Assembly: GCA_964304625.1 (NCBI GenBank)
Contig: OZ199838.1
Coordinates: forward strand, 398,148 to 462,147
DNA: 64,000 nucleotides
DNA from: Kudoa neothunni
Lineage: Eukaryota > Animalia > Cnidaria
Reading direction: 5' to 3'
Shown: in pieces, positions 9,390 through 61,420 of the stretch
Position numbering within the stretch: position 1 is the stretch's first letter
Layout of the letters: each line of letters opens with the position of its first letter
Made by a program: the position numbers and the translations under genes
The notes under the pieces: generated by a model
The model's input: only the letters and a program-made list of their open reading frames with translations
Databases searched by the model: none
Told to the model about the DNA's origin: nothing

Positions 9390-12300
9390 TTATAGATCGT
9401 AAGAAATTTCCTTAGAATTCTTTCTGTAAACCGCTACACCTATCACAACCAAAAGTGAAACCACGATGGGTATCATTGCATATAATCTAAGAAAGCTTAT
9501 CTACAACGAATATGTATATTCTATTACATGTAACTTCCAACAGACCTATCTAATGTCAAACTTGAAAATATAAATGCAAATTACGAATAACTATTCTTTG
9601 CAGCATCAAAATTGTGATTTTCTTTACTATCTACAATGTTTCTTTTTTATCAGATCATTAAATTAAAATAATTTTACTAAATAAAATCTTACACATATGA
9701 CATGAAAATTGTTTTTACCCTTTCTCAACCTTTTCTACTACTTTTTGAACGATATCATCTACTACAATGTTGGCATACTCACTCCTAATGTTTTCTCCTC
9801 CTATAAATTTTTTATTCCACAAGGAGTTTTTATTTAATTTACTAGAGAAATCATTTTAATTATATATTAAATAATTGGAATTTAATTACCCTTTCATTTG
9901 ACCTATTCTTGAGTCTTCGCAAAATATATTATTAGAAAGTAAGGATTATTTAATAATTTAAACAAAATATATATACACTGAATACTATATTTGTTATAGA
10001 GTGAGTAATCCTTTGCTTTTAATTTCAATATGTAATCTTTTTCCCTCGACAAATTATTGATGTTAACAGTACACTTATTGGCAGAACATTCTTCGTCATC
10101 ATTACACCATGTAACAATTTTCCCCTCCTGATTTTCTCCTATTTTTTCCTGAATCATAAATGGACATTTTGAATTGTTATCTTTTCCTTCGAAACGCACA
10201 TCAATTGTCAAGTCACTTTCTCCATTCAACGAATGCTTAATTGAAATAGTACCATTTACTAAAAAATATAATTAAACAAGCTGATAGATTTGGAATACTT
10301 GTTTCAATGGAATACTCCTTTTGTTTTTTGCCATCAGGTGGTTCGACGGTCACTTTGTAGGTAGTTCCTAATTCTAGATTGACTATTCTGAACTCAGCAT
10401 CACATTTGTTCTCGCATGCTCCTATTTCGTCACACGTAGCCATATATTTTGGATCTGAGACACCACTTTTTTTAACATAAATTCTACAGACCGGAAAATA
10501 ATTATTATGTCTAAATGGTGTTATTGTAGCAGTGGAATTCTTTATGGTAGGTTCTGAATTATTCGCAGTTAAATTTTCTCCCTCAGCTAAATATGCTGTT
10601 AACATATGACCGTTTATTTTTTCGTTACTTGTTCGGAATGTTGTTTTCTTTGTATACCCGTTAATCCCAATGTTGGTTACTGCTACGGAAATTACATAAG
10701 TTGTACCGGCCGTAAGATCAGTAATAAAATATTTCTCGTCACAGCTAATATTACATTCATCATTGCTGTCACAACGAGGTTTTGTTTCAGCCGAAAAAGT
10801 ATTTGCTCGGCGTATTTTAATTGTGCATTCTACATTAGACTGACCTTTCTTCATATCCTTATACATGTTAAGTCCGGTAAGAGTGACTCCCGTATCCTTA
10901 ATGTCGCTTATATTTATACCACTGTCATTTCCTATAAGACATTATTTTTAAAGTTGAGTCTAAAATTACTTTTAAAGTATTGTTTGAATCCAACGGTATC
11001 AAACCTTCGTTTAACAATTATTCCAACTTTATCACTGCCATCTGTCAAACTGATAATACCATCTTGACAAAGATGGAAACACTCTTTTTTCTCCTCAGTG
11101 CATCCATTCAGAACAGTACTCTGTTGATTTTGATTATGTTCATCTACCTTAAATACTTTGATATGACAAATCTCGCCGTTATATGGACCAGGAGAGAATT
11201 TTATTTGAAGGTTTCTATCGTTATCAACAACGCTTGAAACAGAATAAATGATCTGAGATTTTAGGGGGGTCTCGGATTTCACGTAACTATTATTTATATA
11301 ATATAATATTCCAGGCCATAACAGTGTTGAACTGACATTATAATAACTTATGTATCTATCAAGTGGGAGAGACGATGATTTAACTTGTAGGGTCTCAGAA
11401 TAAGCTTCCATTTTCATGCTGGTCTCATCTGTGTCACTCTGTGGATCATCCTTCCCGTCATATTGTATATTCCAATCAGTTATTGAGTTTGATTTGTAAG
11501 TGAAATTAACTTCGCCGTCAGTATGAGATATTTTATAAGTGTTATCTTGTTTGTAATCTATAAAAAATATCGTTGAAAATTATATTAAATAAATATTATT
11601 ATTTTTAATTACCCATTAATATTGGGAACACTTGAACCTTTTTACAAGTTTTGGCCTCTTCTTTGTCTGCACCATAACAAACTGATATATATCGAACAAC
11701 TTTTGAATCAATATATCCGACATTAAGGTCACTTTTTGTGCAATCCACTAAACAATAATTTCCATCTACCTCTGTGCAGAGTTGTGGTTTTTTTAACTCA
11801 GCTCCGGTAAAATCAACTATCTTTATTACACACATATTACTCTCGGGAAAATTAGATATTTTAATTGAAAATTTGTCAATTCCTTTATCTGAAGTTGGTA
11901 CATACTTCTGTTCAAGCTTTCCACATCGAATAAAAGCTATAAATGTATGTCAATTTAAACTTCTTTGTAAATGTTACCTGGTATCGATAGCTTGAATGGT
12001 GAGGATTTTTCATGTGCATAAATCATCAACCTGTAATTATATTTGTTATCGTATATGTCATCAAATTGAATATTGTGGCATTTTTTAATATCATCTCTAT
12101 TATCACAACCAATGCAAGACTTTATTATTCTCGTGGGTGAAGCTATTTAAGATAAAAAAAGTAATATGACATTATTACTTTCGTTGGTTTCATGTTTACA
12201 TAACTGATAGTAGCAGTCTGTAGTACTAGCTTCTTCCAAAGATTGTTTCATTTGTATTACGAGCTTGTTCTTCTCAGAATTAGTTGAAATTTTAAATTGA

Positions 12301-15300
12301 ATTGTTTTACCACCTATTTATTTTTTATTCACATATTGAATCCATGAATAATGAATGTTACTTGTTTGTTTGTTTTCAATAATTTGAATATTATAACTAC
12401 CACTGGGAACAATTTTGAGAGTATAAGTTGTGTGGGAGTTGAGTCCAATGATGTCGAACTGTGATTTGCACGATTTTACACACAACTCGTTTTTTGAACA
12501 AATTGCCGGATAATAGAATTTATCATTCTCCTTTATGTAGATGGTACAAATGTTTGATTGAGTTACTGAAGTTATGCTAATGGTGATTCCATTCGCACTG
12601 GTATCGTCTGAAGTAACCTGAATGGAAAGTTTGTTGTCTTGAGCTGAAAATATATTTAAAACCCGTTTAATTTCATAAAATACTTCTTTTATGGAAAAAA
12701 TATTTTCCTGGTGAGTAATTAGGTATACCCGTTATGGTTACCATAACATCATTATGTAAATGAGTTGGTTCAGGAGTAATTTTAACTTCCCCAAAGCTAC
12801 CATCAGACGATGGATTAGTCACTTGTTTCCTACCAATTTCAGTAACTAATGGAGCGTATGTGTTCCAAAGTTTTAGCGAATATGAAACAGCTGGATCGGT
12901 AACTTCTATGCCATCTTCATTTTTATTTTTTCCAGTAATGTTTATTTGAATTTTTTCTTCAGCTGTTGTCACAGAAACATCATTTCCATGTTTCATTAAA
13001 AAATTTTATCTTATATATTAAATATACCTAAATCTTACATATGTATATATTATTTTGATAACCGATAGTAGGTTTCATTCCTAATTTTAGAACCCTTATT
13101 TTAACGGCCTTTACACTCGTGTGCACATTTCCAAATGTATAGCTGTTGCACATACTGAAAAAACAATTTTGCATATTATCACATTCATTCGAAAAAAAAC
13201 TGTTGGAATTTGATGCCGTGGGCGTCTATCCATTCGAATGTGCACATTTCAGATGGCTCTGGATTAACCAGTTGAACTGTGAATCTGTTTAGTTCAGCAT
13301 TTTTTAGTTCGTAATAAAATCTACTGAAAATTGGGGCTTGGTTTTTTAACAAATGTATTGTCGTAGAAATAATGAAAATCAAAATATTCTGGGCAGCTTA
13401 TATAATAATCTTTTATTAACTCGTCGAATTGAATCGAGTAACTTTCTAACTCACCTTGGGAGGTTGTAGACTTTGTTCCCTTCACAGATCCCTGTAATTC
13501 GGCATCCTTATATGCTTCGCATAACAATGAGCATTTATTTAAAACTAATGTTATTTTGTCGTCCTGTAATTCAGCCCTGTGAGTAAGTTCTTCGAAATGA
13601 TCTTAAAAAAATGATTAAATTAATAATGAAATGATACATTACCTATATAATACGAATAGACCTTTCCGACATTAAAATAAATTATTGCATTCGGTTGTTC
13701 TTGTTGATTCTCTTTTCCGGATGATAAAGATGACGAATGGAGGTTTTTCTAAGTTTGCCCTTTTAACGCCGTTGTCTCCTTGAGGTAGATTTTGCCCATC
13801 TACGCCCGATTTTGAAATAATTTTTGTCCTAATGCCCGATTTATTGGCTTTTTTTGCAGTGTTATTTTTACTGTCTTGATAAGTGACAGAAATATAATTT
13901 AATTTATTCGGGCTACTAGGATCAATTTCAATAGCTGATGTAAGTTCAGTGTATTGTTTTTTAATTTCCCCGCTAATTCCAGCATTAACATAACTCAGTA
14001 GGTTATCATTATATTTTTGAATTGTATATTCTTTATTCTCCTTATTAGTTAGAGCATCATTCTTGAATTTTATCTTGTAATTTTGTGCAGATTTATCGTA
14101 ATATAGAATCATTTTATTATCACCTTCATCAATACCACCTATGAATATAAAATTAATATTTCTATAAAGGAACAGTTACATTCTATGGTTTTTTTCTTTT
14201 GGTGTAGAATAATCCACATTTATAACAACTAGTTTATATGTAAATTCACAACTGAGAGAAACCCATGAGAAATCTATTGTGTTAGATCCACTCGTTCCAC
14301 CAGGATTGCATGCACTATTCAAACAATCCTTGATAATTTTGTTAGATCTTCCTTCCAGTAGAACGTATGCCCAAGATGTTCCTGAACTTACAGTTGAAGT
14401 AGCTACCAATGTAACCGTTGTTTTCTTTTGTCCATCATGTTTTGAGATGTTTATTGTTATTTCGGCTCCAGCAGCTATTTAAATTATTTATTCTTAGATT
14501 TCATATATAAATTACTCGAAGTCGCAGTGCTTTCGACGCAGTTATATCCTTTCGGACAAACAATTATTTTGTAGTTTGTTTTAGGATCAAGATTTATTAT
14601 TTTGAAGTTGCTATTACAATCACCCGAACAAAAATTTTTTCCACTATTTTCTTCACAAGTAGCAGGATACAGCGACGTAACACTTTCGATGGCTGAATAA
14701 TAGAGATCACACTTTGCTTCATTACTGTGTTCACCGGAAAATAAATTATGTAAATTTAAAGTTAGTGTGTTATGTTGAATAGAAGTAATGGTTTGTGAAA
14801 AAGTTTCGCTATTTGTTAATTTATCCCCTATTTGAAATTATAAGTATAGATGTAATATGTAACGTTACCTTTAGTTTTAAAATAAAAATAGCGATGATAA
14901 TAATTAACTTCAGGAGAATCTAATGTTGTAAGTCCTTTTATTTTAACTTTTAAAATATATTCTGTTAATGGCAGAAGAGAGCTCAAACTGATTGATCCAA
15001 ATTCTTTACATTGCCCGTCACACGTTAAATCCTTCCAATTATCTTTAATTCCCAGATTTTTCTCTATTATTTTAACTTCAAGAATATCTGCTCCTTCTAC
15101 AGCATTATTTCCACCTTCATCTTTATTTAAATCAGTTAATACTAAGGTCGCCCCATCTATTCCTATCCCAGTAATAGTGGGTTGACCGGTAGCGACTATA
15201 AAATTGATAAGACATATTAGATAGATTAAAATTTACATGTTATAGTTTGAATAAACTCTTTTGATGCTATCTTATCAAAGGGTGTGACGAGTACTTGAGC

Positions 15301-16285
15301 AAATTTCAAAGTTTTATCATGATATAAGGTAGCTTTGTAGCAAGGCTGAAGACAGGGTCCAGCTCTATTCATACCCGAGCAATTAGAAGAAAAATGAGAG
15401 TCATTAATATCTTTTATTCCAAAGTAACAAATTTGCGAGGGTTTCGGATTTTGGAGTGTAATTTTATAATAATTATTATTGCCGGTTTCTTTTGATCCAG
15501 TTGCAATAAACCAATCCTCATCAACATTTTTTGGACTCAATAAAATTTCTGTCGTCTTTTGACCAACCCCAACCACATACGTAGGTTGATATGATTTAGA
15601 ATATAATGTAATAGATTTCTCTGTATAAAAATCAGTCGATGATGGTTGACTATGTTTTGTAACAGAATCCTCTTTGACACCCAGAACGCTGTTTTCTTTA
15701 CTTCGAACTGAAACAATGAACGTACTATTTGCTTTGGTTACTTTCTGCGAACTCTTTATGTAAAGATCTATTTTATTATATCAAAATATTATCAAATAAA
15801 ATAATATACTTTTTATAGCAAAAATCCTCTTGGTAGGGGCAGCTTTTTACATCATTCTCATTCATACCTTGACACCACTTTATGTATTTAATGGATTTAA
15901 ACTCTTGACCAGTGAGATTTAATTCGACTTTTTTACATTCGTAAGTACACATTTTTAAATTTGGATTAAATTTTGTATCACTTATGTCCGTATTACACTT
16001 GGAGGAGAAATCGATTGTTTCCTTATTTTGTCCATAATATTGGAGGGCACAGTGTTTGAAGATATTCTCAACATTGTACCCAGAAAGTGAAATAATATAT
16101 TTCATTGAAATGCGTGAAAAATCCACTTTCATTATATTATTATCAATATTACCAGAGATCACATTGTTCACACATAACACTAATAAAGATTAATATATAT
16201 AATCTCAAAGAGAAATACGAGTGAAAAAGACGAGATATGTTGTAGAAGCGTATCGTTGCCTGAATGACAATCTCGTCTGCATCAT
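9390..16285 (-). CDS. Large multi-exon type I membrane protein with Cys-rich FN3-like repeats, paralog A (~2,000 aa)
   Basis: ATG at 16285 gives MMQTRLSFRQRYASTTYLVFFTL|LCVNNVISG (signal peptide across a 39-nt intron). There are many short GT-AG introns and repeated units ending IxxLxxxTxYx(V/I)xV. The spliced C-terminus is ILYAMIPIVVSLLVVIGVAVY-RKNSKEISYDL* with TAA at 9390-9392. Four +1 homopolymer frameshifts are present in this copy. Confidence 0.85.
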
Positions 16286-16699
16286 AATCTTACTATTTGT
16301 GAATCAACAAAAAATGTTCTATTTAAATTTGTATCGATATGAATAGAGGAATTCATCTTGCCAATTATTCATATGCCCAACTCAATTAAAAAATCAACAA
16401 CCTCGATCTTACGAAAAGATAATAACTATTCAAATGTGATAAAATTTTATGTGAATCGACGATCATCTTTTCGAGTATTATTGATTGTTTCTGACGCCCC
16501 AACTACCACGTTCTGCATTCAATCAAACTGTTTTTACATAATATACAGAAAATATTATTTTAATTCATTTCGGGTTTTCGTTCCCTTTTCGGCCCCTCAT
16601 TTTTGACTGTATTTAGAGTTTTTAAATTTCGAAGATGATTATTATATCGTAATATATCATTAAAGCATGTAATTTTCGATTAAAATTGACGTTTATTTT

Positions 16700-17730: not shown

Positions 17731-17829
17731 AAAGTTAGCAATAAATATAACAAAACATTTGTAATTAATGCGAAAGTTAACAATCGGCTTTAATATAATT
17801 AAATTAATTAAAATTTTTATTTAATTTGG

Positions 17830-20204
17830 CGGAGGCTTTTCCTTTTTCGTTCTCTTAATTGCTGTCAAGCCATAACCTTTAGGCCTCCCAACTGCCTTAA
17901 TTTTACTAGGAATTGTAAGATCTAAAACGTAATAATACTTTCTACATTAAGTTATATAACTTTTAATTCTGGAGGGTTTATTGATTCTCTGTTTTCGACA
18001 TCAGTTATGTCCGGGTTAGGGCGGTTCCAATTACATCCTTTTCGAGCGGCTCAGGTGGTGTACCCTTTATTGGCGAAATTTCAGCAAGACTACTTTCTAA
18101 TTAAACGAATTTGTTGTGTTTTCATAACTTAAATTTATGCTATACCTGAGAAAGTTGGTGAAATGAAGTAAACGTCACCATCATACCCATCAATACCTGC
18201 CTTTAAGAGTGTGCCAAACTCTAAATTAAATCATAGTTTTCAAAAATAGAAACGTTCTACGTATCAACATCTTCAAAGCCGCCAGATTATGATTTTTTAA
18301 TAATGTTTTCACACACTTTGAATAATTTGATGCAGTGATCGAAATATTCCCGCAATACTCAGCGGAAGAAGAGGATAATTTATTGGTATGTACATTGGCC
18401 AACTTCATGAGTTTGGAAAAAAGTGGTTAAATATCATGTTTTTTTATAACAATACCATTTGGGATGATGTTTTGAGTTGAGTCATTTTTAGTTTTGACAA
18501 AATTTGATATATGTTCTTTGTTCTACCCGGGATGATAAATATTGCTATATATGTGGGTCAAATAATGGTAACAATGATTTTGATCTTTGTGATAGAATGT
18601 GATGGCAAGGTAGTTCGTAAGAACGTTAAAACTTACATGTACAAAAATTGATAGTCGAATTATAATTTAATCCACAATCAAATTTTGTTTGCATCTTTCT
18701 CAATACTTTAATTACAAGTTTACAGGAGAATGAAGTTAAGTGATCCCAATACTTTTTTCAACCTCATTTTCAATATTGCTATAGGATGTCTTAGATAATT
18801 CGGTCATTATATGACAAATTTTTTCTGTTCTGAATGAATTCAAACGAATAAGGAATTTATTTAAAAAATCTTCCAAAATAGAGAATTTTTTATCACGCTC
18901 TTCAGTTTTGAATTAAGAGCTTCTAGTCGATTATTTGTTAAATTATTGTAAAAGTGTCGGATTTTACTGAATGAAATGATCCATTGTGGTTTAATTGGAT
19001 CCCAATTTTTCTTGAAATAGATATTGAAATCCAAAATATTATAACTATTGAGCTCATTACATAATTTTTCATAATCCACTTCAATTTTAACATGCTTCAC
19101 TTTTTTAAGGATAGATAACATGGATTCTTTTATTTCATTATTAATATTATATTTCGCAAGTTTTAACTCTCGTTGAAAAATCTGTATAACGTGAAATTTA
19201 CAAATAAACATTTCAGCATTGGAAAAATGACTATTCTTAACTTTTCGAAGCTTTAAATCCTTATCAGTACCAATCGAGAAGACTTTTTCTTTTATCCAAG
19301 GAACAATTGATATCAGTTCATTAATGTACCAGTCAACTACTATTTCAGTCTCCTCAAATATTATACATGCACTATTTAGGTGGGTCCAACCCATAAAGTC
19401 TTCAGAAACCGTCAGATCCAAGTGAGCCCCAAAATTAGAATAGATAACTTTAATATTTTAAAATAATAAAAATAACCGCTAATTAATTAATTTGTAGATT
19501 GCGTCAGTTGATAGATGTTCTAGTAAAAATGAAAAAACATCCTTCATTTTTTCATCCACGAATATAATTGCACTAACTTAGTTTGTTTCACCTGCTAGTA
19601 TTCTAACATCACAATTATAATCTTCCTTTAGTAATTTATAAAGGATGTTCACATCAATCTTTTGCATGGATAGATTTTTGTTAATATTATGTATAGACTT
19701 CAATGTTATCATTTTACCGGTTTCTTGTTGGATTTTGGATTGAATCAATTTTTTGTTGGCGCAAAAAGAAACTAGTTCTGATACCCTTTGATCATTACGA
19801 TTCGATTTTCGTTGTGGAGGAAAACATTTAAAAAAAGTTGGGTTGGTTTCATGATTGTGGCTTAGATTGAGTGATTTTACTTCGAGCGTTTGTCCGTCTG
19901 AACTTACTCTTAGTGATACATGAACAGGACAGGTGCCTTTCATGGTTTGTTTTTATCGAATACCCTTTGACCTGTCTCGATATTGGTCACTGAAATAACA
20001 AACATATCTAACGGAGTAGTAATTTAAGTTTTTGTTGAATTTTTTGGTGAGGACTCGCTTTAGGTTTAATAGTTTTTTTGATTCACGCTTAATCAAGACA
20101 CAGCACGATTGCTGTTCAAACATATGTATAAACTCTTCTAATTGCGTAAAAGAGTCAAATTTTTTACCTACTTCAAATAAATCAATATCGGTTCTATTTG
20201 CCAT
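17830..20204 (-). mobile_element. Second ZSWIM-type MULE transposase, disrupted
   Basis: FDSFTQLEEFI..CPVHVSL..NLSHNHE, IGTDKD, ICKFHVIQ and LTNNRLEA motifs; CTCKF..ELPCHH SWIM finger; GRPKG near 17880. Clearly homologous to the element at 940-3800. Confidence 0.9.
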
Positions 20205-21778: not shown

Positions 21779-21779
21779 T

Positions 21780-45802: not shown

Positions 45803-46422
45803 AAATCTAACAATAGAAATCATTTGATTTTTCGTTCATAATAGTCTGTCCAAATATATTCCATCTCTAGAGATTATTCTCAATTATAAACATTTTTATG
45901 AACTATCAAATTAGTTTTTTATGCATTTTCCAATTTATAACTACTCTTTAAATACAGTTTAGGTGATAATTTATCAAATAGGACTCAATAACTGCATCTA
46001 ATAATGTAGCGATTCGATTAAAAAAATTCACACAACTAAAAATAGTTATATTGCTATAATATAGAAAAAATATTTTGACTATCGATAAATTTTCAATATT
46101 CTACATGTCTGAACAACAACCGTTAATAATAACTTATTGTGAAGTAAGTTTAGGCGGAATAAAACCTAAAAATATTATAAACAGTTTGTTGCACAATTTG
46201 TACTCAACATCGTATTCTTTCATGGTGGAATACAGAACTAGTGTTTAGCATGGAGATTATATTATTTACTACACTGTCATATATGCGATTAGAAGAAAAA
46301 TGTATTTTTATAATTTTGAGGAAAATTTTGATTCACTCCAGATGAGAAGAGCATATAAGATTTTTTGGAACAACTTTCGACGAAAAAAGTCGTAAACTAC
46401 GCTAAAAATGGGGGAGCTACAC
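45803..46422. repeat. Inverted duplicate of ~37219-37838
   Basis: The lines compared (45841, 46081, 46261) are exact reverse complements of lines 37741, 37501 and 37321, in unchanged register. Confidence 0.92.
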
Positions 46423-49400: not shown

Positions 49401-51845
49401 ACCATCATATAGGATGAATGTACGGTGGCGAACAGAGTGGTTTTCGAAGGTTTGGATAGAACGATAAGGGATTTAACAGACAAAAACATTCCGTTTGGTC
49501 GAATCACAATGGTTTTGTCGGCGATTTTCGTTAAACTCTGCCCGTAATACCCAGAGGTACAAGATACGACCATGTAAAATATCCCCTAAAGTTCTCCTCC
49601 TTATGGGCGAACGTTAAAATCATCCATCTCAACACCAATATGAGAGTGTAACTGAGCGATGATGAAGGAGCCAATCAATTCGCTTCAGAAATACTACGGA
49701 TACGTGATAATCAACTTACCATTAGGCCACATGGATGTATTCCTCTGTGTTTCGTGGCAAAACATGGCTTCGTGCATGGATGAATTGACAGACCATGTTT
49801 TTCCAGAAATACAAACAAACTTTTACAACTCAAATTGGCTGTCAGAACGAACTATCTTAACTCCCACAAACTAATCCTTAAACAAAATCAATGATAGATT
49901 GATCCGTCTTATTTCAGGCGACTCTGCGGAGTATAATCATATGACACCGTCGTGGACAAAAATTAATGTATTAATTTCCTTGTTTAATTTCTCAACAGTC
50001 TAGAGTCTAGAGCTATCGGAGGTTCCTTCACACAAGATTCTTCTAATGGTAGACACTCCAATTATTTTGCTAAGAAATTTGGATTCATCAAGGTTGTGTA
50101 ACGGCAATCGACTATTGGTATAGTCGTTAATGTCTTACCTTATTGAGGTCACTATCATAACAGGTTGTGCCAGAGGGTAAGATGTAAATATTCCGATTAT
50201 TCCTTCAGACACCACCTTTAATTTCAGAAGACTGCAATTTCCCATCAAACCATGCTTTGCAATATCCATCAATAAGGCCAAGGGGAAAACCTTCAAAGTT
50301 ACCGGTTTAAATTTGGAGAAACCGTGTTTTTCTCATGGACAGTTGTATATCGCCGGCTCCAGGATAGGCTCCAAACACAATTTATACGCTTTTTCTCCGA
50401 ATGGTCTGACCTAAAATATAATTTATAGGGGGGGTATTACAATAACTATGTTATCATTTTCATATTTATATGAATCTTACTCGCCTATTTAAATTCAGTG
50501 TTTATATAAATTTCATTCAAATTTATTTATATGAAACAATGTCTCTTTGATTCTATTTTTGGGAATATATCTATAATGTTATGTGGAACATTATTCCAAA
50601 TTTTGCAGCATGTTCAAACATTATTCTATTATCATTAAGCGATACGAGTAGAAACTTTACATGAGACACTTTTGTTTGCCAATTTTTGGAGTGCAAAACT
50701 GATAACAATCTTCATCCCCGGCATTTATTTTTGGATGTCGCAGTAGACTATGCGATTTATGTGCTTCGATTACTGTTTGAGGTATGTTGTGTTTTTTTCA
50801 CAAAAAATATCGAATACATCATGCTGCTCATCTAACTTTATGGGGGGCAATAATCGTTACTTTGAGTGTTATATCAACCTCTATTTTCTTCTTAAGAATG
50901 CCGTCAGTATCTTTTATTGTAATAGGATCAGACGTTGGATGGATTCCCAAAACAAACATAAAATGGTAGGGTATAGTTATTTTTCCTGTTAAACATATAT
51001 TGGGTGTTAGAGATATACGTACTTTTTCTGAAAACGTGTTGCTGATCAATTCTAAGCTTGTATATGCAAATCTTCTAAAAATACATTTTGTAAAATGCCG
51101 GTTCGCCGTCGTCTTAATGTTACTACGATCCAATTCCACGGCTAATTTGATCCCATATCTTAAAGTAATCACAAATCCTGATTAAACGAACGCGTTAGTT
51201 TTAAAAGTGACATAATACTGTGTTATTATATCTTTAAATATGCTTGTGGAAGTATTTTGAAGTTTGTTGTCTGCATTTTTCAAGATTTTGCGTGTGACGG
51301 TGCGACGAAATTTCTTTGGTAAGCGTTTATAGGATTTCATGTTCAAAATTTAATCTACCACATTGTTATAGGTATGATTCAACTGAGCAGGTCTATAACA
51401 GAATTCAAGTGATAATTCAATTTCGGAATCTATATCCCTTTATCCGTTGACTGTATAGTTGTATTCCGTTGTAATGCCTCACGTATACGTCGATTTCTAT
51501 TTGCTTTCCTTCGTTTCTTAAAATCGCGGATGCATCAAATAATGACGATGAGATTTAAATGAAATGAGGTTCATTTTGTTTGAATTATAGTTTCTTTAAT
51601 ATATTTTTATTAGGTTTTTTCTGTTTCTTGTTAAATATAATGGCTACCTACATTATTGTGTAAAATTTTATGTTTCATTTATGACTGTTCATTTCGTGTA
51701 GTAAATTTTCGGCAGATGTTTATGCCAATAACATATTGAAACATTTATTATATTGGAAAATATAATTTAAAAAATTTTTATTTCAATTTTGTCCCCTAAA
51801 TTAGATATTCCCACCACTCCGAGCGTAGCCGGATATTTCAGCTAG
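46420..51845 (+). mobile_element. Helitron (RepHel pseudogene, 5'-truncated) with intact 3' terminus
   Basis: GPDLFLTFTCNP, TIE*QK*ELSHAHIL (HUH motif) and HINVEYC..IKYKCKYVNK; Pif1 motifs DAPGGTVKT, SSGIAATLLPGGRT and RRLQFPI..FSHGQLY (to ~50445). The 3' end is CCGAGCGTAGCCGG..CTAG|T at 51842-51846. Confidence 0.93.
50660..51570 (-). pseudogene. Unidentified degraded passenger ORF inside the Helitron 3' arm
   Basis: One frame stays open for ~200 codons (about 51438-50828) with only two stops, and flanking frames extend it. No recognisable motif. Confidence 0.4.
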
Positions 51846-51849
51846 TACA

Positions 51850-52817: not shown

Positions 52818-52945
52818 TTAATAGGTGCAAATCTCCTAAACGTTTTGAAACTATTTCTGAGAAAAAAAAATAGAGAACAATATAAATACAATTTTTTCTC
52901 TTGTTCATTTAAATTTTGAATAAACATTAGGCACAAAAAGATTAA

Positions 52946-54336
52946 CCCTCACCGTACTGCGCGCGAAAAAATTACGCGTGTGTCGATGGGGTCTATTTGG
53001 GACCCCCTTTTAAATCAGCCTTAAACTCCTTCAATTATCACGAAACTAACACGATGTTATTTATAGACATTTATAAGTATAAAAAATAAAATCTAGCTCT
53101 CTCCGGTAGTTTAAAATGCAGATTTGAGACCAAGATGAACTTATTGTGTCCGACCAATATGATGAAATCAGCGCATATATTTCAGCGCCAATGATTTAGA
53201 AGGTGTCTAAACGAAATAAATGTCTAATTTAACCGACTAAATGCTATAAAAAATTAATAGATGATGATCAAGCACAGGGCCGACTAAGCGCCGTCCTATA
53301 GAAATTATCGGAATATTTCGGAAGTAGTAAATGTAGCGGCGCATGCAGTTTGCTCTGAGATTTCATAGAGAGCAGTGTTTGAAGAACTCGCATGGTTTTA
53401 ATTCCTTCAAAATTAAAATAAAAAAAATTATAAAGGTGCATTGCTTAGTAATGCATTTGCATTTTTAAATGCTACGTCCTCTTACGTTTTTACGAACTTT
53501 TTTTATTTATTTGCATATTTAAGAGTTAATATGATTAGATTAAAGAATTTTATTTGAGGAAACCTAAGTAGTTTGAATATTTTGGTATCCATACTTACAA
53601 AACTGCTGGAACACACGTCTAACGCTTTTATACGAATAATTCGTAACACACACGTCGATATCAATAATCAATAAACGCACAGTGCTTTAACTACTGTTAT
53701 ATACTCAATACAAATATTAATAGCCATTATTTCTGACTATTTTTGAAAATTATTGATATTTCCTGTTGCTTATTTTATTAAATTTGCAGTAGAACAATTG
53801 TTCGCCAAATACCTTGTACTCTATCAATTTATATTTCGTCGAATAAAAATTACCGAATCCCCAGATAATAAACAAAGATTCTAATAGTTATATTGCAAAT
53901 AATGAATCATGGATTAATTTATTGTTGGTAAACAGAGATTCTTTAGAGAAACAAGAGTCTACCAACCAAGAAGCGCGGTACGTATGAATTCTCGCTAATC
54001 TCCTATTAAGTCGAAGTATGTATAAACCTTACGTATATATGACTTAAAAATCAATTAAACAAAATTTATATATATAAATAAGTAAAATAGATTAATATGC
54101 ATATAATGGACCATTTTTCTTGAAATTCTATAGGAATAAATATGCGGATTATGAAATAAATATAATCTCTAAGGCATATTTTTTAAATTAGAAAAAGAAT
54201 TATGGTTTCTATACTTACTTTTTAACCTTATAAAGGCATTCCTGGAACAGTTAAGAAGTCAATAGTTCATTTTCAGAGTAACGCGAAAAATACTAAAATT
54301 GGGGTCCCTAATGGACCCCGCTTCGGACAGGTAGGG
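52946..54336. mobile_element. Non-autonomous piggyBac element in the 3' flank of paralog B
   Basis: TTAA|CCCTCACCGT ... CAGGTAGGG|TTAA with GGGGTC..GACCCC palindromes at both ends. The empty site is visible at ~9182 beside paralog A. Confidence 0.92.
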
Positions 54337-54509
54337 TTAATAAATAAGAATTAAGAAGTGATACGCATAATAAATGTTGTTAAGATTTTATATATTTTTA
54401 GAAAAAAATAAATATAAGTTCAATATGAAAAGATACTAAAAGTTATCTATTACAATAATTTTATAATAATATTGGTAACTGATGTAATGGATGATGAATA
54501 TATCAGTTT

Positions 54510-57500
54510 TTATAGATCGTAAGAAATTTCCTTAGAATTCTTTCTGTAAACAACTACACCTATCACAACCAAAAGTGAAATCACGATGGGTATCATTGCA
54601 TATAATCTAAGAAAGCTTATCTACAACAAATATGTATATTCTACTACATGTAACTTCCAACAGACCTATCTAATGTCAAACTTGAAAATATAAATGTAAA
54701 TTACGAATAACTATTCTTTGCAGCATCAAAATTGTGATTTTCTTTACTATCTACAATGTTTCTTTTTTATCAGATCATTAAATTAAAATAATTTTACTAA
54801 ATATAATCTTATAAATATGACATGAAAATTGTTGTTACCCTTTCTCAACCTTTTCTACTACTTTTTGAACGATATCATCTACAACAATGTTGGCATATTC
54901 ACTCCTTATGTTTTCTCCTTCTATAAATTTTTTATTCCATAAGTTTCATTTATTTAAGTTACTAAAAGTAGATTATTATAATTATATAATAGATAATTGG
55001 AATTCTATTACCTTTTTATTTTACCAATTCTTGAGTCTTCGCCAAATATATTATTAGAAAATAAGAATTATTTAATAATTTAAACAAAATATATTACATT
55101 GAATACTATATGGTCTATACAGTGAGTGATCTTTTGCTTTCAATTTCAATATATAATCCTTTTCTATCGATAAATTATTGATGTTAACGACACATTTATT
55201 GGCAGAGCATTCTTCATCATCATTACACCATGTAACAATTTTTCCCTCCTGGTTGTCTACGATTTTTTCCTGAATCATAAACGGACATCTTGAATTGTCA
55301 TCTTTTCCTGTGAAATCCACTTTAATTGTCAAGTCACTATCTCCATTCAACGAATGCTTAAGTGAAATACTACCATTTACTAAATAATATTAATAAAACA
55401 TAAGATTATTGATTATGAATACTTGTCTCAACAGAATACTCCTTTTGTTTTTTGCCATCAGATGGTTCGACGGTTACGTTGTAGGTCACTCCCAATTCTA
55501 GGTTGACAATTTTGAACGTAGCATCACATTTATTCTCACATGCTCCCATTCCCTCACACGTAGCCATATATTTTGGATCTGAGACAGCACTTTTTTTAAC
55601 ATAAATTCTACAGACCGGCAAATAATTATCATGTCCAAATGGTGTTATTATAGCAAGTGGAATTTTGGATATTTGGTTTCGAATCCTTTGCAGCTAAATC
55701 TCCTCCCTCAGCTAAATATATCGTTAAACATTAGTGTTTAAATATGCTTTTACTTGTTCGGAATGTTATTTTCTTTATATAATCAGAAATCCCAATGTTG
55801 GTTACTGTTACAGAAACTACATAACTTGTACCCCTCGCAAGCCCATTAATTGAATACGTCGCTGCACAATTAGTATTACATTCACCATTGCTATCACAAC
55901 GAGGTTTTGTTTCAGTCGAAAAAGTATTTACTTGGCGTATTTTAATTGTACATTCTACATTAGGTTGACCTGTATTCATATCCTTATACACGTTAAGTCC
56001 AGTAAGGGTGACTTCCGTGTCCTTAATATCGCTTATATTTATACCACTGTCATTTCCTAAAAGACATTATTTTTATTGTTGAATCCAATACTACTTTTAA
56101 AATATTGTTTGAATCCTTCGGTATCAAACCTTCGTTTAACAATTATTCCAATGTTCTCACTGCCTTCTGTCAAACTGATAATACCATCTTGACAAAGATG
56201 GAAACACTCTTTTTTCTCCTCAGTGCATCCATTCAGAACAGTACTTTGTTGAGTTGGGTCACTTCCATCTACCTTAAATACCTTGATGTGACAAATTTCG
56301 CCATTGTATGGACCAGGAGAGAATTTTATCTGAAGTCTTCTATTGTTATCCTCAATACCTGAAACAGAATAAATAATCTCAGATTTTAGTGGGGTCTCAG
56401 AATTCAAATAAGTATTATTCATGTAATAGAATATTCCAGGCCATAACAGCGTTGAACTGATATTATAATAACATATGTATCTATCAAATGAGAGCGAAAC
56501 AGTTTTAACGTTTGTAGTCTCGGAATAAGTTGATATATCAAATAAAGTCTTTTTTGTACCAATATGTGGATCATCCATCCCGTCATATTGTATATTCCAA
56601 TCAGTCATTGAGTTTGATTTGTAAGAGAAATTAACTTTGCCATCAGCATAAGATATTGCATAAGTGTTATCTTGTATGTTATCTATAAAAAATATCGTTG
56701 AAATTTATAATGTATAAATATTCTTTATTTTAATTACTCATTATTATTGGGAACACTTGCATCTTTTTACATCTTCTGGCTTCTGCGTCGTCTGCGCCGT
56801 AACAAACTGATATATATCGATCGACTTTTGAATTAATATATCCGACGTTAAGATCGCTTTTAGTGCATTCCACCAAACAATCATCCCCATCTCCTTCTGT
56901 GCAGAGTTGTGGCTTTATAAATTCAGTTCCTGCAAAATTAGCCATTTTTATCACACACTTTGCTGCGGAAAAATCTTTCAATGTAACGGAAAATTTCTCA
57001 ATATCTACATCCGAAGATTTATAAACTTTTGTTCGAGTTTTCCACGTCGAATAAAAGCTATAAATGTATGTCAATTTAAACCTCTGTGTAAATGTTACCT
57101 GGTATCGATAGCTTGAATGGTGACGATTTTTGATCTGCATAAATCATCAACCTGTAGTTATATTTGTTATCGTATATATCATCAAATTCAATTTGGACGC
57201 ATTTTTTGACATCATTACTATTATCACATCCAATACAAGACTTTATTATTCTCGTGGGTGAAGCTATTTGAAGATAATAAAAATAATATGACACTATTAC
57301 TTTCGTTTGTTTCATGTTTATATAACTGATAGTAACATTTTGTAGTGCTTGCGTCATTCATATTTCCTTTTGGTTGTATTATGAGCTTGTTCTTCTTGGT
57401 ATTAGTTGAAACTTCAAATTCAATTTGTTCACCAACTATTGATTAATTAATTAAATATGTAAATAATTCCCATTACTGGTTTTTTTGTTAAAAATTTGAG

Positions 57501-60500
57501 TGCCATACGTTCCACTAGGAACAATTTTCAATTCATACGTAGTATAGAAATTAAGCCCAATGATGTCGAACTGTGATTTGCACGATTTTACGCACAACAC
57601 ATTATCTGCACAAATTGCAGGATAATATAAATCACTTTTCTCTTTTATGTAGATGGTACAAATATTTTCTGGAGCCGCTAAATTTTGATTAATTGTGATT
57701 CCATTCGCGCTGGCAGAGATTGAATCCTCTCTAATTAAAAGTTGTTGGTTTTGAGCTGAAAATATGTTTAAAATAACTTTTAATCTGACTAAATACTTAT
57801 TTTGTGGAAAAAATATTTTCTTGGTGAGTAATTAGGTATACCCGTTATGGTCACCATAATATCATTATGTAAATAAGTTGGATCAGGCTCAATTTGAACC
57901 TTCCCAAAGCTACAATCGGGCGATGAACCACCTACATCTTTCCTCCCGTTTTCAGTAACTAGTGGAGCGTATGAGTTCCATAAGTTTATCGTGCATGCAA
58001 CAGGCGGAGGAGAAATTTCTCCACCATCTTCATTTTTATCTTTCCCCCTAATGTTTATTTGAATTTTATTTTCAACTGTTGTCGCAGGAACATCGTCACC
58101 ATGTTTCACTAAAATATTTTGTGTTATTTATTAAATATATCAAAGTCATACGTATGTGTATATTATTTTGATAACCGATAGTAGGTTTCATTCCTAGTTT
58201 TAGCACCCTTATTTTAACCGCCTTTACACTCGGCTGCACATTTCCAAATGTATAGTTGTTGCACAAACTGAAGAAACAATTTTCTTGATTATCACATCGA
58301 TTCGAAAAAAAACTGTTTGAATTTGCCGCTGTGGCGTCTATCCATTCGAATGTGCACATTTCAGACGGCTCTGGATTAGTAAGTTTAACTGTAAATGTAT
58401 CTTTTTGTTCAACATTATTTAATTCGTAATAAAATCTACTTAAAAAGGGAGCTTGATTTTTAACAAATGTATTGTCATAGAAATAATGGAAATCAAAATA
58501 TTCAGGGCAGCTTATATAATAATCTTTGACTAACTCATCAAATTGAATCGAATAACTTTCAACTTTGTTATGGGTGTCGCAAGATTGTGGTTGATTCACA
58601 ACAATTTGTTTTTTGGTATCCTTGAATGATTTGCATTTTAATGGGCATTTATTTAAACCCAATTTTATATTGTCGCCTTCTAATTTAGCTGTGTGGGTAA
58701 TTTCTTCGTAATGATCTTCAAAAAATGATTTAATTCATAAAAAAATTATTTAATACCTATATAGTATGAATAGACCTTTCCTTCATTAAAAGGGACGTTT
58801 TTTGTCGTTGGTATTATCGATTTTTCTTGTTCAAATGTTGAACGTGATGGTGTTTGATTTATTATCACCCCTGGGTCGCCGTTATTTCCTATAAGTGGTC
58901 CTTTCGTATTGCTGCTTCCTGAAGGCAGGACTTCGCCAAGTGATTGCAATCTTGCAATAATTTCTTTCTTAATACCCGATTTTTTGGCATCTGTGTCGGC
59001 AGTTTTACTGACTTGATAAGTGACAGAAATATAATTTGGTTTATTCGGACTATTAGGATCAATTTCGAATTCTGTTGAAAGGACGGTGCATTGTTTTGGC
59101 GTTTCCCCACCGATTCTGTCATCAGAATAACCCAAAAGGTCATCTTTAGATTTTTTGACTGTGCAATGCTTGTTGCTCTTACTAGTTAGTTCATTATTCT
59201 TGAATTTTACCTTGTACTTTCGTGCAGATTTATTGTAATATAATACCATATCCTGATTACCTTCATCGATACCACCTATAAATAAAAAGTTAATATTTCA
59301 ACAAAATAACAATTACATTCTATGTTTTTTTCTGTTGGGTTGGAATAACCAACATTTATAACAACTAGTTTATAGGTAACTTCGCAACTGAGAGAAGCCC
59401 ATGAGAAATCTATTGTGTTAGTTCCAGTCGCTATAATGGGATCACATGCGCTATTCAAACAATCCTTGATAATTTTTGTAGATTCTTGTTCCAGTAGAAC
59501 GTACGCCCAAGAATTTCCTAATGTTTGACCTGAAGCAGCAGCCACGGTAGCTTTAGTTTTCTTTTCCTCAACAACTTTTGAGGTGGTTATTTCTATCTCG
59601 ATTCCACCAGCTATTAAATTTCATTTTCATTAAACTTTACAAATAAATTACTTGATTCCCCAATGTTTTCAATACAGTTATATCCTTCCGGACAAACAGT
59701 TATTTTGTACGTTGTTTTAGGGTCAAGGTTTATAATATTGAATTCAATGTTACAAGCACCGGAACAAAATTCATTAGCTTGACCTTTTTTACATGTAGCA
59801 GGATACATCGATGTATTGCTTCCAGCAACTGAATAGTAGAGATCACATTTTGCCTGATTAACTCTTTCATCGGAGAATGAACTAGATAGATTTAGAGTTA
59901 GTGCATTTTGTTGATCAGAAGTGGGGGTTATGTTTAGTTCACCAGTTTTTATTACTTGTTCTCCTATATAAATTTAGGAATATAGAGTTAATATTTATCG
60001 TTACCTTTAGTTTTGAAATAGAAATAACGGTGGTAATAATTAACTCCAGGAGAATCTAATGTTGTAAGTCCTTTTATTTTAAGTTTTAAAATATATTCTG
60101 TTAGTGGCAGAAGAGAGCTCAAATTGATTGATTCAAATCGTTTGCAACCACCATCACACGTTACATCGTTCCAGTTATTTTTAATTCCCAGATTTTTCTC
60201 CATTATTTTAACTTCAAAAATATCTGCTCCATCTACAGCACTAGTCTCGCCTTCATTTCGATTTAAATTAGTTAACTCTACAGTTGCCACGTTCTTTCCA
60301 GTTACAGTAACAGTAGGTTGACCGGTAGCGACTATAAAATTGATAAGACATATTAGATAGATTAAAATTTACATGTTATAGTTTGAATAAACTCTTTTGA
60401 TGTTATCTTATCAAAGGGTTTAACGAGTACTTGGGCGAACTTAAAATCTGTCTCATGATATAAGGTAGCTTTGTAGCAAGGTTGAAGACATGGTCCAGCT

Positions 60501-61420
60501 CTCTTCATACCCGAACAATTAGAAGAAAAATGAGAGTCATTAATATCTTTTATTCCAAAATAACAAATTTGTGAAGGTTTCGGATTTTGGAGCGTAATTG
60601 TATAATACTTATTATTATCGTTGTTTTCTTTTGAACCAGTTGCAATAAACCAATCCTCATCAAGGTTTTTTGAACTCAATAAAATTTCTGGCGTTTTTTG
60701 ATCGACTTCAATCACATACGTAGGTTGATATGATTTAGAAGGTAGTGTAATAGATTTTGTTGAAAAAAAGGTTTCCGACGATCCGTGTCTCTGTCTTGAA
60801 GCAGAATTTTCTTTGTCTGTCAATTCGTTACTGTCTTTACTTTGAACTGAAACAGTGAACGTACTAATTGTTTTGGTTGCTGTCAGTAAACTCTTTATGT
60901 AAAGATCTATTTTATTATATTAAAATATGGTCAAATATATTTCCATACCTTTTATGGCAAAAACTTTCTTGATTGGGCATTTTTTTACATCATTACCATC
61001 CTTACCTTGACACCATTTTATAAATTTAATGGTTTTAAACTCTGCACCACTAAGATTTAGTTCGACTTTTTTACATTCGTAAGTACACATCTTTAAATTT
61101 GTATCCAATTTCGCATCATTTTGAACATTTGTGCAATTAGGGACAGTGTCAATTTTCGCCCCATTATGGTCATAGTATACGAGAGCGCAATGTTTGAAGC
61201 TATTCTCAATATTGTACCCAGAAAGTGAAATAATATATTTCTTAAAAGTGTGCGAAAAATTCACTTTCATTATATTATTATCAATATTATCAGAGATCAC
61301 ATTTTTCAAACATAACACTAATAAAGATTAATCTATATAATCTCAATGAAAATTACAAGTTAAAATGACGAGATATATTGTAGAAGCATATCGTTGTCTC
61401 AAAGACAATCTCATCATCAT
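54510..61420 (-). CDS. Large multi-exon type I membrane protein with Cys-rich FN3-like repeats, paralog B (~2,000 aa)
   Basis: ATG at 61420 gives MMMRLSLRQRYASTIYLVILTL|LCLKNVISD. Colinear exon by exon with paralog A; TM and RKNSKEISYDL* tail with TAA at 54510-54512. One +1 frameshift was seen at 55655. Confidence 0.87.

What the first reader, a model, noticed from the sequence alone, without database searches (positions are those of the whole stretch)
9390..61420. Candidate variant surface-protein family: paired ~2,000-aa receptors with variable ectodomains and an invariant anchor
Seen: two colinear genes ~45 kb apart, each with signal peptide, large Cys-rich ectodomain, single TM and an 11-aa tail. 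The ectodomains alternate near-identical blocks (LQNPKPSQICYFGIKDINDSHFSSNCSGM; STVLNGCTEEKKECFHLCQDGIISLT) with heavily substituted, indel-rich blocks (e.g. 13680-14100 vs 58780-59230). Cys positions and intron positions are largely kept. Inference: this looks like a host-exposed adhesin or antigen family diversifying on a fixed disulfide scaffold. I do not recognise the family, and it is the best candidate for an undescribed system here.
Basis: partly seen in the sequence, partly recalled or inferred. Interest (0 to 1): 0.85.

Follow-up and report, generated by a model that had tools for sequence, protein, structure and literature searches.

The report
Mosaic giant surface-protein gene family
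The two genes are frame-broken copies from a family of about 60-70 undescribed giant cell-surface proteins in a tuna-muscle parasite (very probably the myxozoan Kudoa neothunni); family members swap DNA segments and carry one hypervariable loop, so this may be a surface-variation system in an animal parasite, though no expression data exist.

Summary
The sequence observation holds. Two colinear 7.4-kb units (9182-16564 and 54337-61702, minus strand) are 82% identical, introns included. Each has a signal peptide, about 18 FN3-like beta-sandwich modules, one transmembrane helix and the 11-residue tail RKNSKEISYDL.

They are not a pair. At least 18 copies are 76-84% identical over the whole unit, and about 68 loci carry the family's most conserved exon. 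Each window copy is a patchwork whose nearest paralogue changes every few hundred bases (PHI test: 0 of 500 permutations).

Both window copies are frame-broken: A has at least 5 lesions and B has 2. Seven of the 16 aligned close copies are intact (about 1,950-1,970 aa).

dN/dS averages 0.46 and ranges from 0.05 to about 1.7 in 30-codon windows. The peak is a 50-residue, indel-rich, predicted-disordered loop in exon 7. That loop diverges twice as fast as introns but always stays in frame.

No Pfam, PDB or Atlas relative was found, and only five exon-sized fragments turned up among billions of public proteins.

The genome matches Kudoa neothunni, whose genome paper does not mention this family. 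Earlier notes of this scan met the same family on other DNA, through its nested introns. I derived those introns independently here. No RNA evidence could be obtained.

The parts
54510..61420 (-). Copy B: 22-exon gene model from ATG (61420) to stop (54510). It is frame-broken in exon 13 (-1 at ~57020) and exon 16 (+1 at ~55656).
   Evidence: The splice model comes from frame continuity and from GT/AG sites conserved in 16 paralogues.
9390..16282 (-). Copy A: the same 22-exon layout, with at least 5 disabling lesions. These are exon 2 +1 at ~15839, exon 6 +1 at ~14188, exon 7 -26 at ~13747, exon 8 +1 at ~13347 and +1 at ~13222, and the intron-8 acceptor changed from AG to AA at ~12996.
54337..61702 (-). 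Duplicated unit B: the gene plus about 280 nt upstream and about 175 nt of 3'UTR. In most copies the 3' limit of similarity falls at 54333-54339.
9182..16564 (-). Duplicated unit A.
58800..58965 (-). Hypervariable loop of copy B, inside exon 7 (59275-58757). Its nearest relative is copy L025, not copy A.
   Evidence: Median pairwise p-distance is 0.47 here against 0.23 in intron cores, and the length varies only by multiples of 3. AlphaFold2 gives pLDDT below 50 with no secondary structure for residues 97-145 of exon 7, between two strands of one sandwich. The alignment is A2.
13686..13825 (-). Hypervariable loop of copy A. It carries the 26-nt frame-breaking deletion.
56095..56682 (-). Exon 14 of B. 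It encodes two tandem beta-sandwich modules, and it is the exon used for the census and for the fold.
   Evidence: 147 matches in the own genome. The AlphaFold2 model has pLDDT 74. Residues 101-195 match FN3 domains at VIA Z 7.5-7.7 with rmsd 2.3-2.5 over 75-81 residues.
58152..58715 (-). Exon 8 of B. It is the most constrained part (dN/dS 0.05-0.2 in windows) and is distantly related to exons 3 and 14.
54510..54606 (-). Last exon of B: the transmembrane helix, the 11-residue tail RKNSKEISYDL and the stop codon.
9390..9486 (-). Last exon of A: the transmembrane helix, the tail and the stop codon.
54921..55012 (-). Nested intron 1 of B, of [D1,2] stwintron type. The inner intron is 55011-54962. 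Removing it joins G(55012) to TAACTT, which rebuilds the outer donor. It follows the 24-nt micro-exon 55036-55013.
   Evidence: Only this reading keeps the frame into the transmembrane exons, in 16 of 16 close copies and in 3 copies that are 70% identical.
54751..54839 (-). Nested intron 2 of B. The inner intron is 54838-54797. It lies between exon 18 (54920-54840) and the 46-nt exon 18b (54750-54705).
9801..9890 (-). Nested intron 1 of A.
9631..9719 (-). Nested intron 2 of A.
54340..55100 (-). Near-invariant 3' block of B: the small exons, the introns between them and the 3'UTR. Median identity across 16 copies is 89-94%, and it is 97-98% to several of them.

Best explanation
The window holds two decayed members (A and B) of a large multigene family that is restricted to Kudoa-like myxozoans.

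Shown:
- An intact member encodes a type I membrane glycoprotein of about 1,950-1,970 aa. It has a signal peptide, a rod of about 18 FN3-like beta-sandwich modules, one transmembrane helix and an invariant 11-residue tail.
- Each module is pinned by 2-4 conserved cysteines and is encoded by one phase-1 exon, or two modules share one exon.
- The genome holds about 68 loci. Eighteen of them belong to a close subfamily, and ten of those lie in a 176-kb cluster on chromosome 1 that contains this window.
- Members exchange short sequence tracts across clusters and across chromosomes, so every copy is a mosaic.
- The 5' end, and above all the anchor, tail and 3'UTR block, are kept nearly identical. 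The module cores are under purifying selection. One disordered 50-residue loop, in the module encoded by exon 7, changes sequence and length faster than introns but always in frame.
- About half of the close copies, including both in this window, are frame-broken yet still share 90-98% identical tracts with intact copies.

Inferred:
- The proteins sit on the parasite surface, either on the plasmodium or on a cell-cell interface.
- The family supplies variant adhesive or antigenic surfaces.
- Ectopic gene conversion, with pseudogenes as possible donors, is the diversity generator.
- The conserved ends serve as homology anchors and as a common sorting or docking signal.
For: Family size and clustering.

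Whole-unit identity of 76-84% in 14 further loci.

Gene model: the introns are 37-61 nt and almost all phase 1. Exon lengths stay multiples of 3 across copies, while exon 7 ranges from 450 to 525 nt.

Intact versus broken copies.

Internal module homology: hhalign gives 95-97% probability among exons 5, 10, 15 and 16, and 84% between exons 3 and 8.

Fold.

Selection: dN 0.187, dS 0.410, ratio 0.46 (range 0.41-0.51). By exon the ratio runs from 0.25 to 0.76. Of 189 windows, 6 are above 1, five of them in the exon-7 loop, and 22 are below 0.2.

Loop: it is predicted disordered. Its p-distance is 0.47 against 0.23 for introns, and its indels are in frame. Loop cassettes are shared between copies: L020-L024 differ by 0.05 and B-L025 by 0.19.

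Mosaicism: B's nearest neighbour switches in the order L020, L032/L027, L025, L022, L020, L023, L027, L028, L024, with 90-98% tracts on an ~80% background. PHI is 0.5075 against 0.5336 +/- 0.0017, with 0 of 500 permutations as low.

Lineage restriction: only 3 true hits among 1.84 billion representatives and 2 more in the 5.8-billion set. One of them (L013) keeps exons 9-14 colinear, with tiny introns, at about 55% identity.

Organism: three chromosomes of 17.15, 12.04 and 11.05 Mb plus an 18.2-kb mitochondrial contig, and about 30% GC in the window. This matches K. neothunni as published: 3 chromosomes, 30.41% GC, median intron 49 bp, QV 48.5 (PMC12239612).
Against: - There is no RNA or protein evidence for any member (PMC12239612 reports that very few parasite RNA reads mapped).
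- dN/dS is below 1 almost everywhere. The one region at or above 1 is a disordered loop, where misalignment inflates both rates and where relaxed constraint alone gives about 1.
- dS (0.41) exceeds intron divergence (0.20-0.28). The neutral yardstick is therefore uncertain: the tiny introns may be constrained or homogenised.
- Kudoa plasmodia grow inside muscle fibres, where antibody pressure may be weak.
- Loci are not strictly subtelomeric.
- The direction of conversion cannot be read from one genome, so a donor role for pseudogenes is not shown.
- The assembly rests on about 7x HiFi coverage, so a few homopolymer frameshifts could be errors. The 26-nt deletion, the lost acceptor and the number of lesions could not be.
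Confidence: 0.55

Rival explanations
1. These are the parasite's own adhesion or structural proteins, used for example in cell-in-cell contacts, sporoblast or valve-cell junctions, or a glycocalyx rod. The family grew by neutral duplication. Concerted evolution through gene conversion merely homogenises it. The 'hypervariable' loop is an unconstrained spacer.
For: Overall dN/dS is 0.46, with strongly constrained cores at 0.05-0.2. The variable segment is predicted disordered. The tail is invariant and ends in YDL, a possible class II PDZ-type or sorting signal typical of adhesion receptors (the reading of the motif is my inference). Similarity to FN3-array receptors such as LAR and CD45 is at fold level only.
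Against: The loop diverges about twice as fast as intron cores, and distinct loop cassettes are kept and exchanged between copies. That is more than loss of constraint predicts if introns are neutral. About 68 loci of roughly 6 kb of coding sequence each is a heavy load for housekeeping adhesion in a genome with 5,316 predicted genes. Amino-acid identity between close copies is only 66-72%.
Confidence: 0.25
2. This is a self/non-self (allorecognition or mate/fusion recognition) system. It would be like the Hydractinia Alr gene complex, another cnidarian family of clustered, polymorphic, single-pass beta-sandwich receptors with pseudogenes.
For: The lineage is cnidarian. The genes are clustered single-pass receptors with a variable region, abundant pseudogenes and recombination among paralogues. 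The comparison with Alr rests on my own knowledge and was not tested.
Against: No sequence similarity to anything outside Kudoa-like samples was found. The ectodomain has about 18 modules against 2-3 in Alr. The 11-residue tail has no ITAM- or ITIM-like signalling motif. The variable part is a disordered loop in the seventh coding exon of 22 (codons ~700-770 of ~1,950), not the membrane-distal N-terminal domain.
Confidence: 0.07
3. The family is non-functional repeated DNA: dead gene relics, or cargo of a mobile element spread through a genome that is 45.6% repeats.
For: Both window copies and 9 of 16 close copies have frame breaks or a lost start. In most copies similarity ends at the same 3' position. 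The units lie among piggyBac-, Tc1- and MULE-type transposase ORFs.
Against: Seven copies keep an open 5.9-kb reading frame across 22 exons. Indels in exons are multiples of 3, while those in introns are not. dN/dS is 0.46, down to 0.05 locally. No terminal inverted repeats flank the units. Introns are retained, which rules out retro-copies.
Confidence: 0.05

Closest known systems
Protozoan variant surface gene families diversified by segmental gene conversion (Trypanosoma VSG, Plasmodium var, Pneumocystis MSG, Babesia ves)
   Same: All are large paralogous families with many pseudogenes and mosaic genes built from short exchanged tracts. All have conserved ends that can serve as homology anchors, and variable surface-exposed parts.
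   Different: This host organism is an animal (a cnidarian). The fold is different, being FN3-like arrays. The genes have 22 exons. The loci are not strictly subtelomeric. No expression-site or mutually exclusive expression evidence exists. Overall dN/dS is below 1.
Toxoplasma SRS and Plasmodium 6-Cys (s48/45) families
   Same: Both are parasite surface families built from tandem disulfide-pinned beta-sandwich modules, with dozens to more than 100 members.
   Different: No sequence relationship was found. These proteins have a transmembrane anchor and tail where SRS proteins have a GPI anchor. They have about 18 modules, where SRS proteins have two.
Metazoan FN3-array receptors (LAR/PTPRF, CD45, DCC, contactins)
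   Same: These give the best fold matches: VIA Z 7.2-7.7 with rmsd 2.3-2.6 over 75-81 residues. The type I topology and the one-exon-one-module, phase-1 organisation are shared.
   Different: The Pfam fn3 score stays below its cut-off (24.7 and 18.8 against 25). There is no phosphatase or other cytoplasmic domain, only 11 residues. This is a multigene family with conversion, not a single conserved orthologue.
Hydractinia allorecognition (Alr) gene complex
   Same: It is also a cnidarian, clustered family of single-pass beta-sandwich receptors with a hypervariable region, pseudogenes and inter-paralogue recombination (from my own knowledge).
   Different: It has 2-3 Ig-like domains and signalling tails, and its variable domain is N-terminal. 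No similarity was detected here, and a direct comparison was not run.
VSP-like, RIFIN/STEVOR-like and ETRAMP-like families reported in the myxozoan Sphaerospora molnari (bioRxiv 10.64898/2026.02.11.705288)
   Same: These are lineage-specific, duplicated membrane-protein families in a myxozoan, proposed to serve immune evasion, in a genome with abundant MULE elements.
   Different: Those are small Cys-rich (over 10% Cys, CXXC) or Plasmodium-like proteins. The present family has 3.3% Cys, about 1,950 aa and FN3-like modules, and it is not mentioned there or in the Kudoa genome paper.

Membership tests
Fibronectin type III domain (Pfam PF00041) | The sequence scores above the Pfam gathering cut-off (25 bits). 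| tested here: not met
   The best scores are 24.7 bits (A, open frame 10237-10866, covering exons 15-16) and 18.8 bits (L021 exon 15). All other exons give no hit.
Fibronectin type III domain (fold level) | A seven-strand beta-sandwich superposable on solved FN3 domains. | tested here: met
   Model residues 101-195 of exon 14 match LAR FN3 (6tpu_B: Z 7.6, rmsd 2.5, 79 residues), CD45 d3-d4 (Z 7.2) and fibronectin (Z 7.1). Z values below 8 are common for this fold class, so this shows the fold and not homology.
Giardia-type variant-specific surface proteins (VSP) | More than 10% Cys with many CXXC motifs, and a conserved short basic C-terminal motif. | tested here: not met
   Cys is 3.1-3.4%. 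The modules use C-x5/6-C-x3/4-C spacing. The tail is RKNSKEISYDL.
Adhesion GPCRs (giant ones were noted elsewhere in this genome by earlier notes) | A GAIN/GPS motif and a 7TM domain after the ectodomain. | tested here: not met
   There is only one hydrophobic segment, at the C-terminus. The 10 GPS matches in the genome lie elsewhere and are not next to the distant module hits. PF00002 gave no match in six-frame search, but that result is uninformative.
Antigenic-variation gene system (functional class) | A large paralogous family with a pseudogene reservoir. | tested here: met
   There are about 68 loci. Nine of the 16 close copies carry a frame break or a lost start codon, and 2 further copies are fragmented.
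Antigenic-variation gene system (functional class) | Mosaic genes formed by segmental gene conversion. | tested here: met
   The nearest neighbour switches along the gene. PHI test: 0 of 500 permutations.
Antigenic-variation gene system (functional class) | Diversifying selection on exposed parts. | tested here: inconclusive
   Windows with dN/dS of 1.0-1.7 occur only in the exon-7 loop, plus one window at codon 1661. The loop diverges faster than introns, but it is disordered and poorly alignable.
Antigenic-variation gene system (functional class) | Surface exposure to the host and expression of one or a few members at a time. | not testable with these tools
[D1,2] stwintron (nested spliceosomal intron) | An inner GT-AG intron splits the G|T of the outer donor, and its removal rebuilds a canonical donor. 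| tested here: met
   At the sequence level there are two sites per gene. The frame into the transmembrane exons is kept only under this reading, in 16 of 16 close copies and 3 distant copies. Ordered two-step splicing itself was not testable without RNA.

The most novel reading that the evidence does not exclude
Kudoa runs a true antigenic or adhesive variation system. A few of the roughly 68 giant FN3-array surface genes would be expressed at a time. New variants would be assembled by segmental gene conversion from a reservoir that includes pseudogenes such as the two in this window, with the invariant 5' and 3' blocks acting as recombination anchors. This would be the first such system in an animal parasite.
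Probability: 0.15. Interest if true: 0.9.

Novelty: new variant of a known kind. Interest (0 to 1): 0.65.

Why it matters
Myxozoans are economically important fish parasites whose host-interface molecules are almost unknown.

The K. neothunni annotation was built from protein hints alone: 5,316 genes, with 45.6% of the genome called repeats. A lineage-specific family of about 68 six-kb coding sequences was therefore probably missed or masked.

If these proteins are surface-exposed, they are prime candidates for adhesion, immune evasion or diagnostics. They would also show that variation driven by gene conversion with pseudogene reservoirs, known from protozoa and bacteria, evolved in an animal too.

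The family also carries two nested introns per gene. That gives a concrete test bed for stwintron-type splicing outside fungi.

Tried and rejected
- Known-family searches found nothing usable. These were Pfam on every exon, phmmer of exon 14 against 1.84 billion representatives, exon 8 against the 5.8-billion set, a PDB profile search that gave only a spurious designed repeat protein, and the ESM Atlas, whose best score of 0.76 is noise.
- Foldseek against the PDB gave only generic tandem-sandwich matches.
- Mobile-element idea: no terminal inverted repeats flank either unit.
- Taxon guesses were rejected. An arthropod or nematode is unlikely because there is no R&R cuticle domain or cuticle-collagen domain (weak evidence, since the controls did not ring). 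HSC70 is at most 78% identical to anything named. An orthonectid was considered and dropped once the Kudoa neothunni description matched.
- My own first splice models were wrong in four places and were replaced after comparing 16 copies. The 99-nt intron after exon 2 became 42 nt. The 94-nt intron before exon 13 became 41 nt. The 177-nt and 232-nt 'introns' near the 3' end resolve into three micro-exons, ordinary tiny introns and two nested introns.
- I looked for a link between the distant module hits and adhesion GPCR loci through GPS positions and found none.
Exons were searched one by one, by reference. Joined coding sequence was used only inside local scripts, for translation checks and dN/dS.
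Full report
**Observation**

The window is AT-rich (about 30% GC).

A blastn comparison of the two named regions gives one alignment of 7,448 columns at 82.0% identity, 9182-16564 against 54337-61702, on the minus strand. The alignment covers introns and short flanks. A window self-comparison shows no other long duplicate.

**Gene model**

I therefore built the splice model from three things: frame continuity, GT/AG sites, and conservation in 16 paralogues.

The result is 22 exons. Copy B runs from the ATG at 61420 to the stop ending at 54510. Copy A runs from 16282 to 9390.

The introns are tiny, 37-61 nt, and most are exactly 41 nt. All are phase 1 except the last two, which are phase 2. This is the classic layout of exon-per-module extracellular proteins.

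Across copies, the exon lengths differ only by multiples of 3. Exon 7 ranges from 450 to 525 nt. Intron indels are not multiples of 3. Together these support both the model and real coding constraint.

Near the 3' end, two apparent long introns resolve into micro-exons of 24, 46 and 18 nt. Two of the intervening introns keep the reading frame only if an inner GT-AG intron is removed first from between the G and the T of the outer donor. The sites in B are 55012-54921 and 54839-54751. This holds in 16 of 16 close copies and in three copies that are only about 70% identical.

I reached this reading before looking up earlier notes, which describe the same design in this family elsewhere in the genome.

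Exons were searched one at a time by reference. Joined coding sequence was used only in local scripts.

**Protein**

Intact paralogues encode about 1,950-1,970 residues (5,862-5,922 nt of coding sequence).
- A signal-peptide-like N-terminus.
- 60-65 cysteines, with 54 of 74 Cys-containing columns invariant.
- 13-27 N-glycosylation sequons.
- One C-terminal hydrophobic helix.
- The tail RKNSKEISYDL.

Profile-profile comparison shows that exons 5, 10, 15 and 16 are copies of one module (95-97% probability). Exons 3 and 8 are related at 84%.

AlphaFold2 on exon 14, with 38 aligned family sequences, gives two beta-sandwiches at pLDDT 74. Foldseek finds only generic tandem Ig/FN3 chains. VIA-align places residues 101-195 on FN3 domains of LAR, CD45, fibronectin and cytokine receptors, at Z 7.1-7.7 and rmsd about 2.5 A over 75-81 residues.

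Pfam fn3 stays just under its cut-off, and no other family matches any exon.

**The two genes are not a pair**

Exon 14 matches 147 places in the organism's own 40.26-Mb genome, which is a lower bound. Exon 8 matches about 68 loci at 39-100% identity. The 3' block has 18 copies at 84% identity or more.

Ten of these 18 copies lie between 339 and 515 kb of chromosome 1. The window is C1:398148-462147. The rest are spread over all three chromosomes, with further clusters on C2 at 6.21-6.35 and 9.47-9.74 Mb and on C3 at 9.0-10.4 Mb.

Fourteen fetched loci align with B over the whole unit at 76-84% identity.

**Both window copies are broken**

Measured against the family alignment:
- A has +1 in exon 2, +1 in exon 6, a 26-nt deletion in exon 7, two +1 changes in exon 8, and AA instead of AG at the acceptor before exon 9.
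- B has -1 in exon 13 and +1 in exon 16.

Seven of the 16 aligned copies are fully open: L021, L022, L025, L026, L028, L031 and L032. Two more, L020 and L023, differ only in exon 1.

The published assembly quality is QV 48.5 (PMC12239612). That predicts about 0.2 errors in 15 kb, so most lesions should be real. Single-base changes in short homopolymers remain open to doubt at about 7x coverage.

**Mosaicism**

In 300-nt windows, B's nearest relative changes repeatedly:
- L020 at 95-96% around 61440-61303
- L032/L027 at 92%
- L025 at 89-95% over 58850-58420, which includes the variable loop
- L022 at 86-91%
- L027 at 97% at 55531
- L028 at 94%
- L024 at 98%

The family median is about 75-85%. 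Copy A is rarely the best match for B. A shows the same pattern. The partners lie on other chromosomes as well.

A four-gamete-based PHI test on 1,230 informative sites gives 0.5075, against 0.5336 +/- 0.0017 under permutation. None of 500 permutations was as low. Incompatibility rises with distance, from 0.44 to 0.54.

HiFi reads are longer than a unit, so tracts of under 1 kb are unlikely to be assembly chimeras. That last point is inference.

**Selection**

These estimates use Nei-Gojobori counting on ten open or nearly open copies.

| Measure | Value |
|---|---|
| dN | 0.187 |
| dS | 0.410 |
| dN/dS | 0.46 (range 0.41-0.51) |
| dN/dS, A against B | 0.49 |
| dN/dS by exon | 0.25 (exon 17) to 0.76 (exon 7) |
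| Intron-core JC distance | 0.20-0.28 |

Of 189 windows of 30 codons, 22 have a ratio below 0.2; they lie in exons 2, 3, 4, 8, 12 and 17. Six windows exceed 1. Five of these are contiguous in exon 7, at codons about 700-770, with a peak of 1.7.

That segment is a stretch of about 50 residues rich in Gly, Ser, Pro, Lys and Glu. Its length changes by multiples of 3 only.

AlphaFold2 predicts it as unstructured, with pLDDT 28-39. It lies between the last two strands of one sandwich, so it is an exposed loop and not an inter-module linker.

Its median p-distance is 0.47 against 0.23 for introns. Near-identical loop cassettes occur in different copies: L020-L024 differ by 0.05 and B-L025 by 0.19.

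The anchor end behaves in the opposite way. From about 55100 to 54340, median identity is 89-94% and reaches 98%, introns included.

**Range and organism**

Outside this genome, only five exon-sized fragments were found, in five public samples. One contig (L013) keeps exons 9-14 colinear at about 55% identity, separated by tiny introns.

The genome has three chromosomes of 17.15, 12.04 and 11.05 Mb and an 18.2-kb mitochondrial contig that uses TGA as a sense codon. Its HSC70 is at most 78% identical to any named protein.

This matches the published Kudoa neothunni assembly:
- three chromosomes
- 30.41% GC
- median intron 49 bp
- 45.62% repeats
- 5,316 genes predicted from protein hints, with almost no RNA

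These figures come from PMC12239612. Kudoa mitochondrial genomes are reported at 15.9-19.4 kb.

That paper does not mention surface families, paralogues or fibronectin. A library search for myxozoan FN3 or transmembrane families found nothing comparable.

A preprint on another myxozoan reports unrelated small VSP-like and RIFIN-like families, and suggests antigenic variation.

**Interpretation**

Shown: this is a large family of giant single-pass FN3-like array proteins, restricted to Kudoa-like myxozoans. It has purifying selection on the module cores, one fast-evolving in-frame loop, homogenised ends, pervasive segmental exchange and many pseudogenes. The two copies in this window are among the pseudogenes.

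Inferred: the proteins sit on a parasite surface, and conversion among paralogues produces surface variants. I give this 0.55.

Rivals:
- An internal adhesion or structural role, with the loop simply unconstrained (0.25).
- Allorecognition (0.07).
- Non-functional repeats (0.05).

A full antigenic-variation system with restricted expression is possible (0.15) but untested.

**Earlier notes of this scan**

Notes on other windows describe the same family through its two nested introns, and name Kudoa neothunni. One of them lies inside locus L034, where I saw the same structure.

Other notes report mosaic ectodomains and giant adhesion GPCRs built from similar modules. I could not link the distant module hits to GPS-bearing loci.

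Noticed in passing
window 54751-55012 and 9631-9890 (minus strand): Each copy has two consecutive nested introns of [D1,2] stwintron type. They flank exon 18, on the way to the transmembrane exon, and come with micro-exons of 24, 46 and 18 nt. They are required for the reading frame in all 16 close copies and in 3 distant copies. Earlier notes of this scan report the same design in this family elsewhere.
   Followed up: yes
window 9390-16282 and 54510-61420: Intron size is extremely uniform. Most introns are exactly 41 nt, the range is 37-61 nt, and almost all are phase 1. Every apparent 'long intron' resolved into several tiny ones.
   Followed up: yes
window 1602-2678 (+), 18861-19421 (-), 20566-21573 (-), 24272-25138 (-), 39014-40264 (+), 42785-43770 (+): The space around and between the two copies is filled with DNA-transposon ORFs. 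These are MULE/ZSWIM-type, Tc1/mariner-type DDE_3 with HTH domains (two copies) and piggyBac-type DDE_Tnp_1_7 (two copies).
   Followed up: partly
window 37219-37838 and 45803-46422: A pair of 620-nt inverted repeats, 98.9% identical, encloses about 8 kb that contains a piggyBac-type ORF and a Tc1-type ORF. It may be a recent composite or nested element.
   Followed up: no
window 46744-47300 and 50531-51088; ORFs 46794-47285, 47799-48389, 48941-49573, 50828-51172: A block with higher GC (0.36-0.38) has inverted arms that are 68% similar. Its four ORFs of 114-210 aa match no Pfam family. It is unexplained.
   Followed up: no
window 54510-54545 and 9390-9425 (last codons): The cytoplasmic tail is nearly invariant in the family and ends in S-Y-D-L. 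This could be a class II PDZ-type or sorting signal. That is inference only.
   Followed up: no
window 52839-52945 vs 9075-9185: A 111-nt piece of 3' flank lies next to unit A, but is separated from unit B by about 1.4 kb. This suggests an insertion right at the 3' edge of unit B.
   Followed up: no
G000 C1:2528900, C1:15957706, C1:16000031, C2:3208768, C2:3242222, C2:6081254, C2:9600098, C2:10479301-10533688: Ten GPS-motif matches mark adhesion-GPCR-like loci elsewhere in the genome. None lies next to the distant hits of this family's modules.
   Followed up: partly
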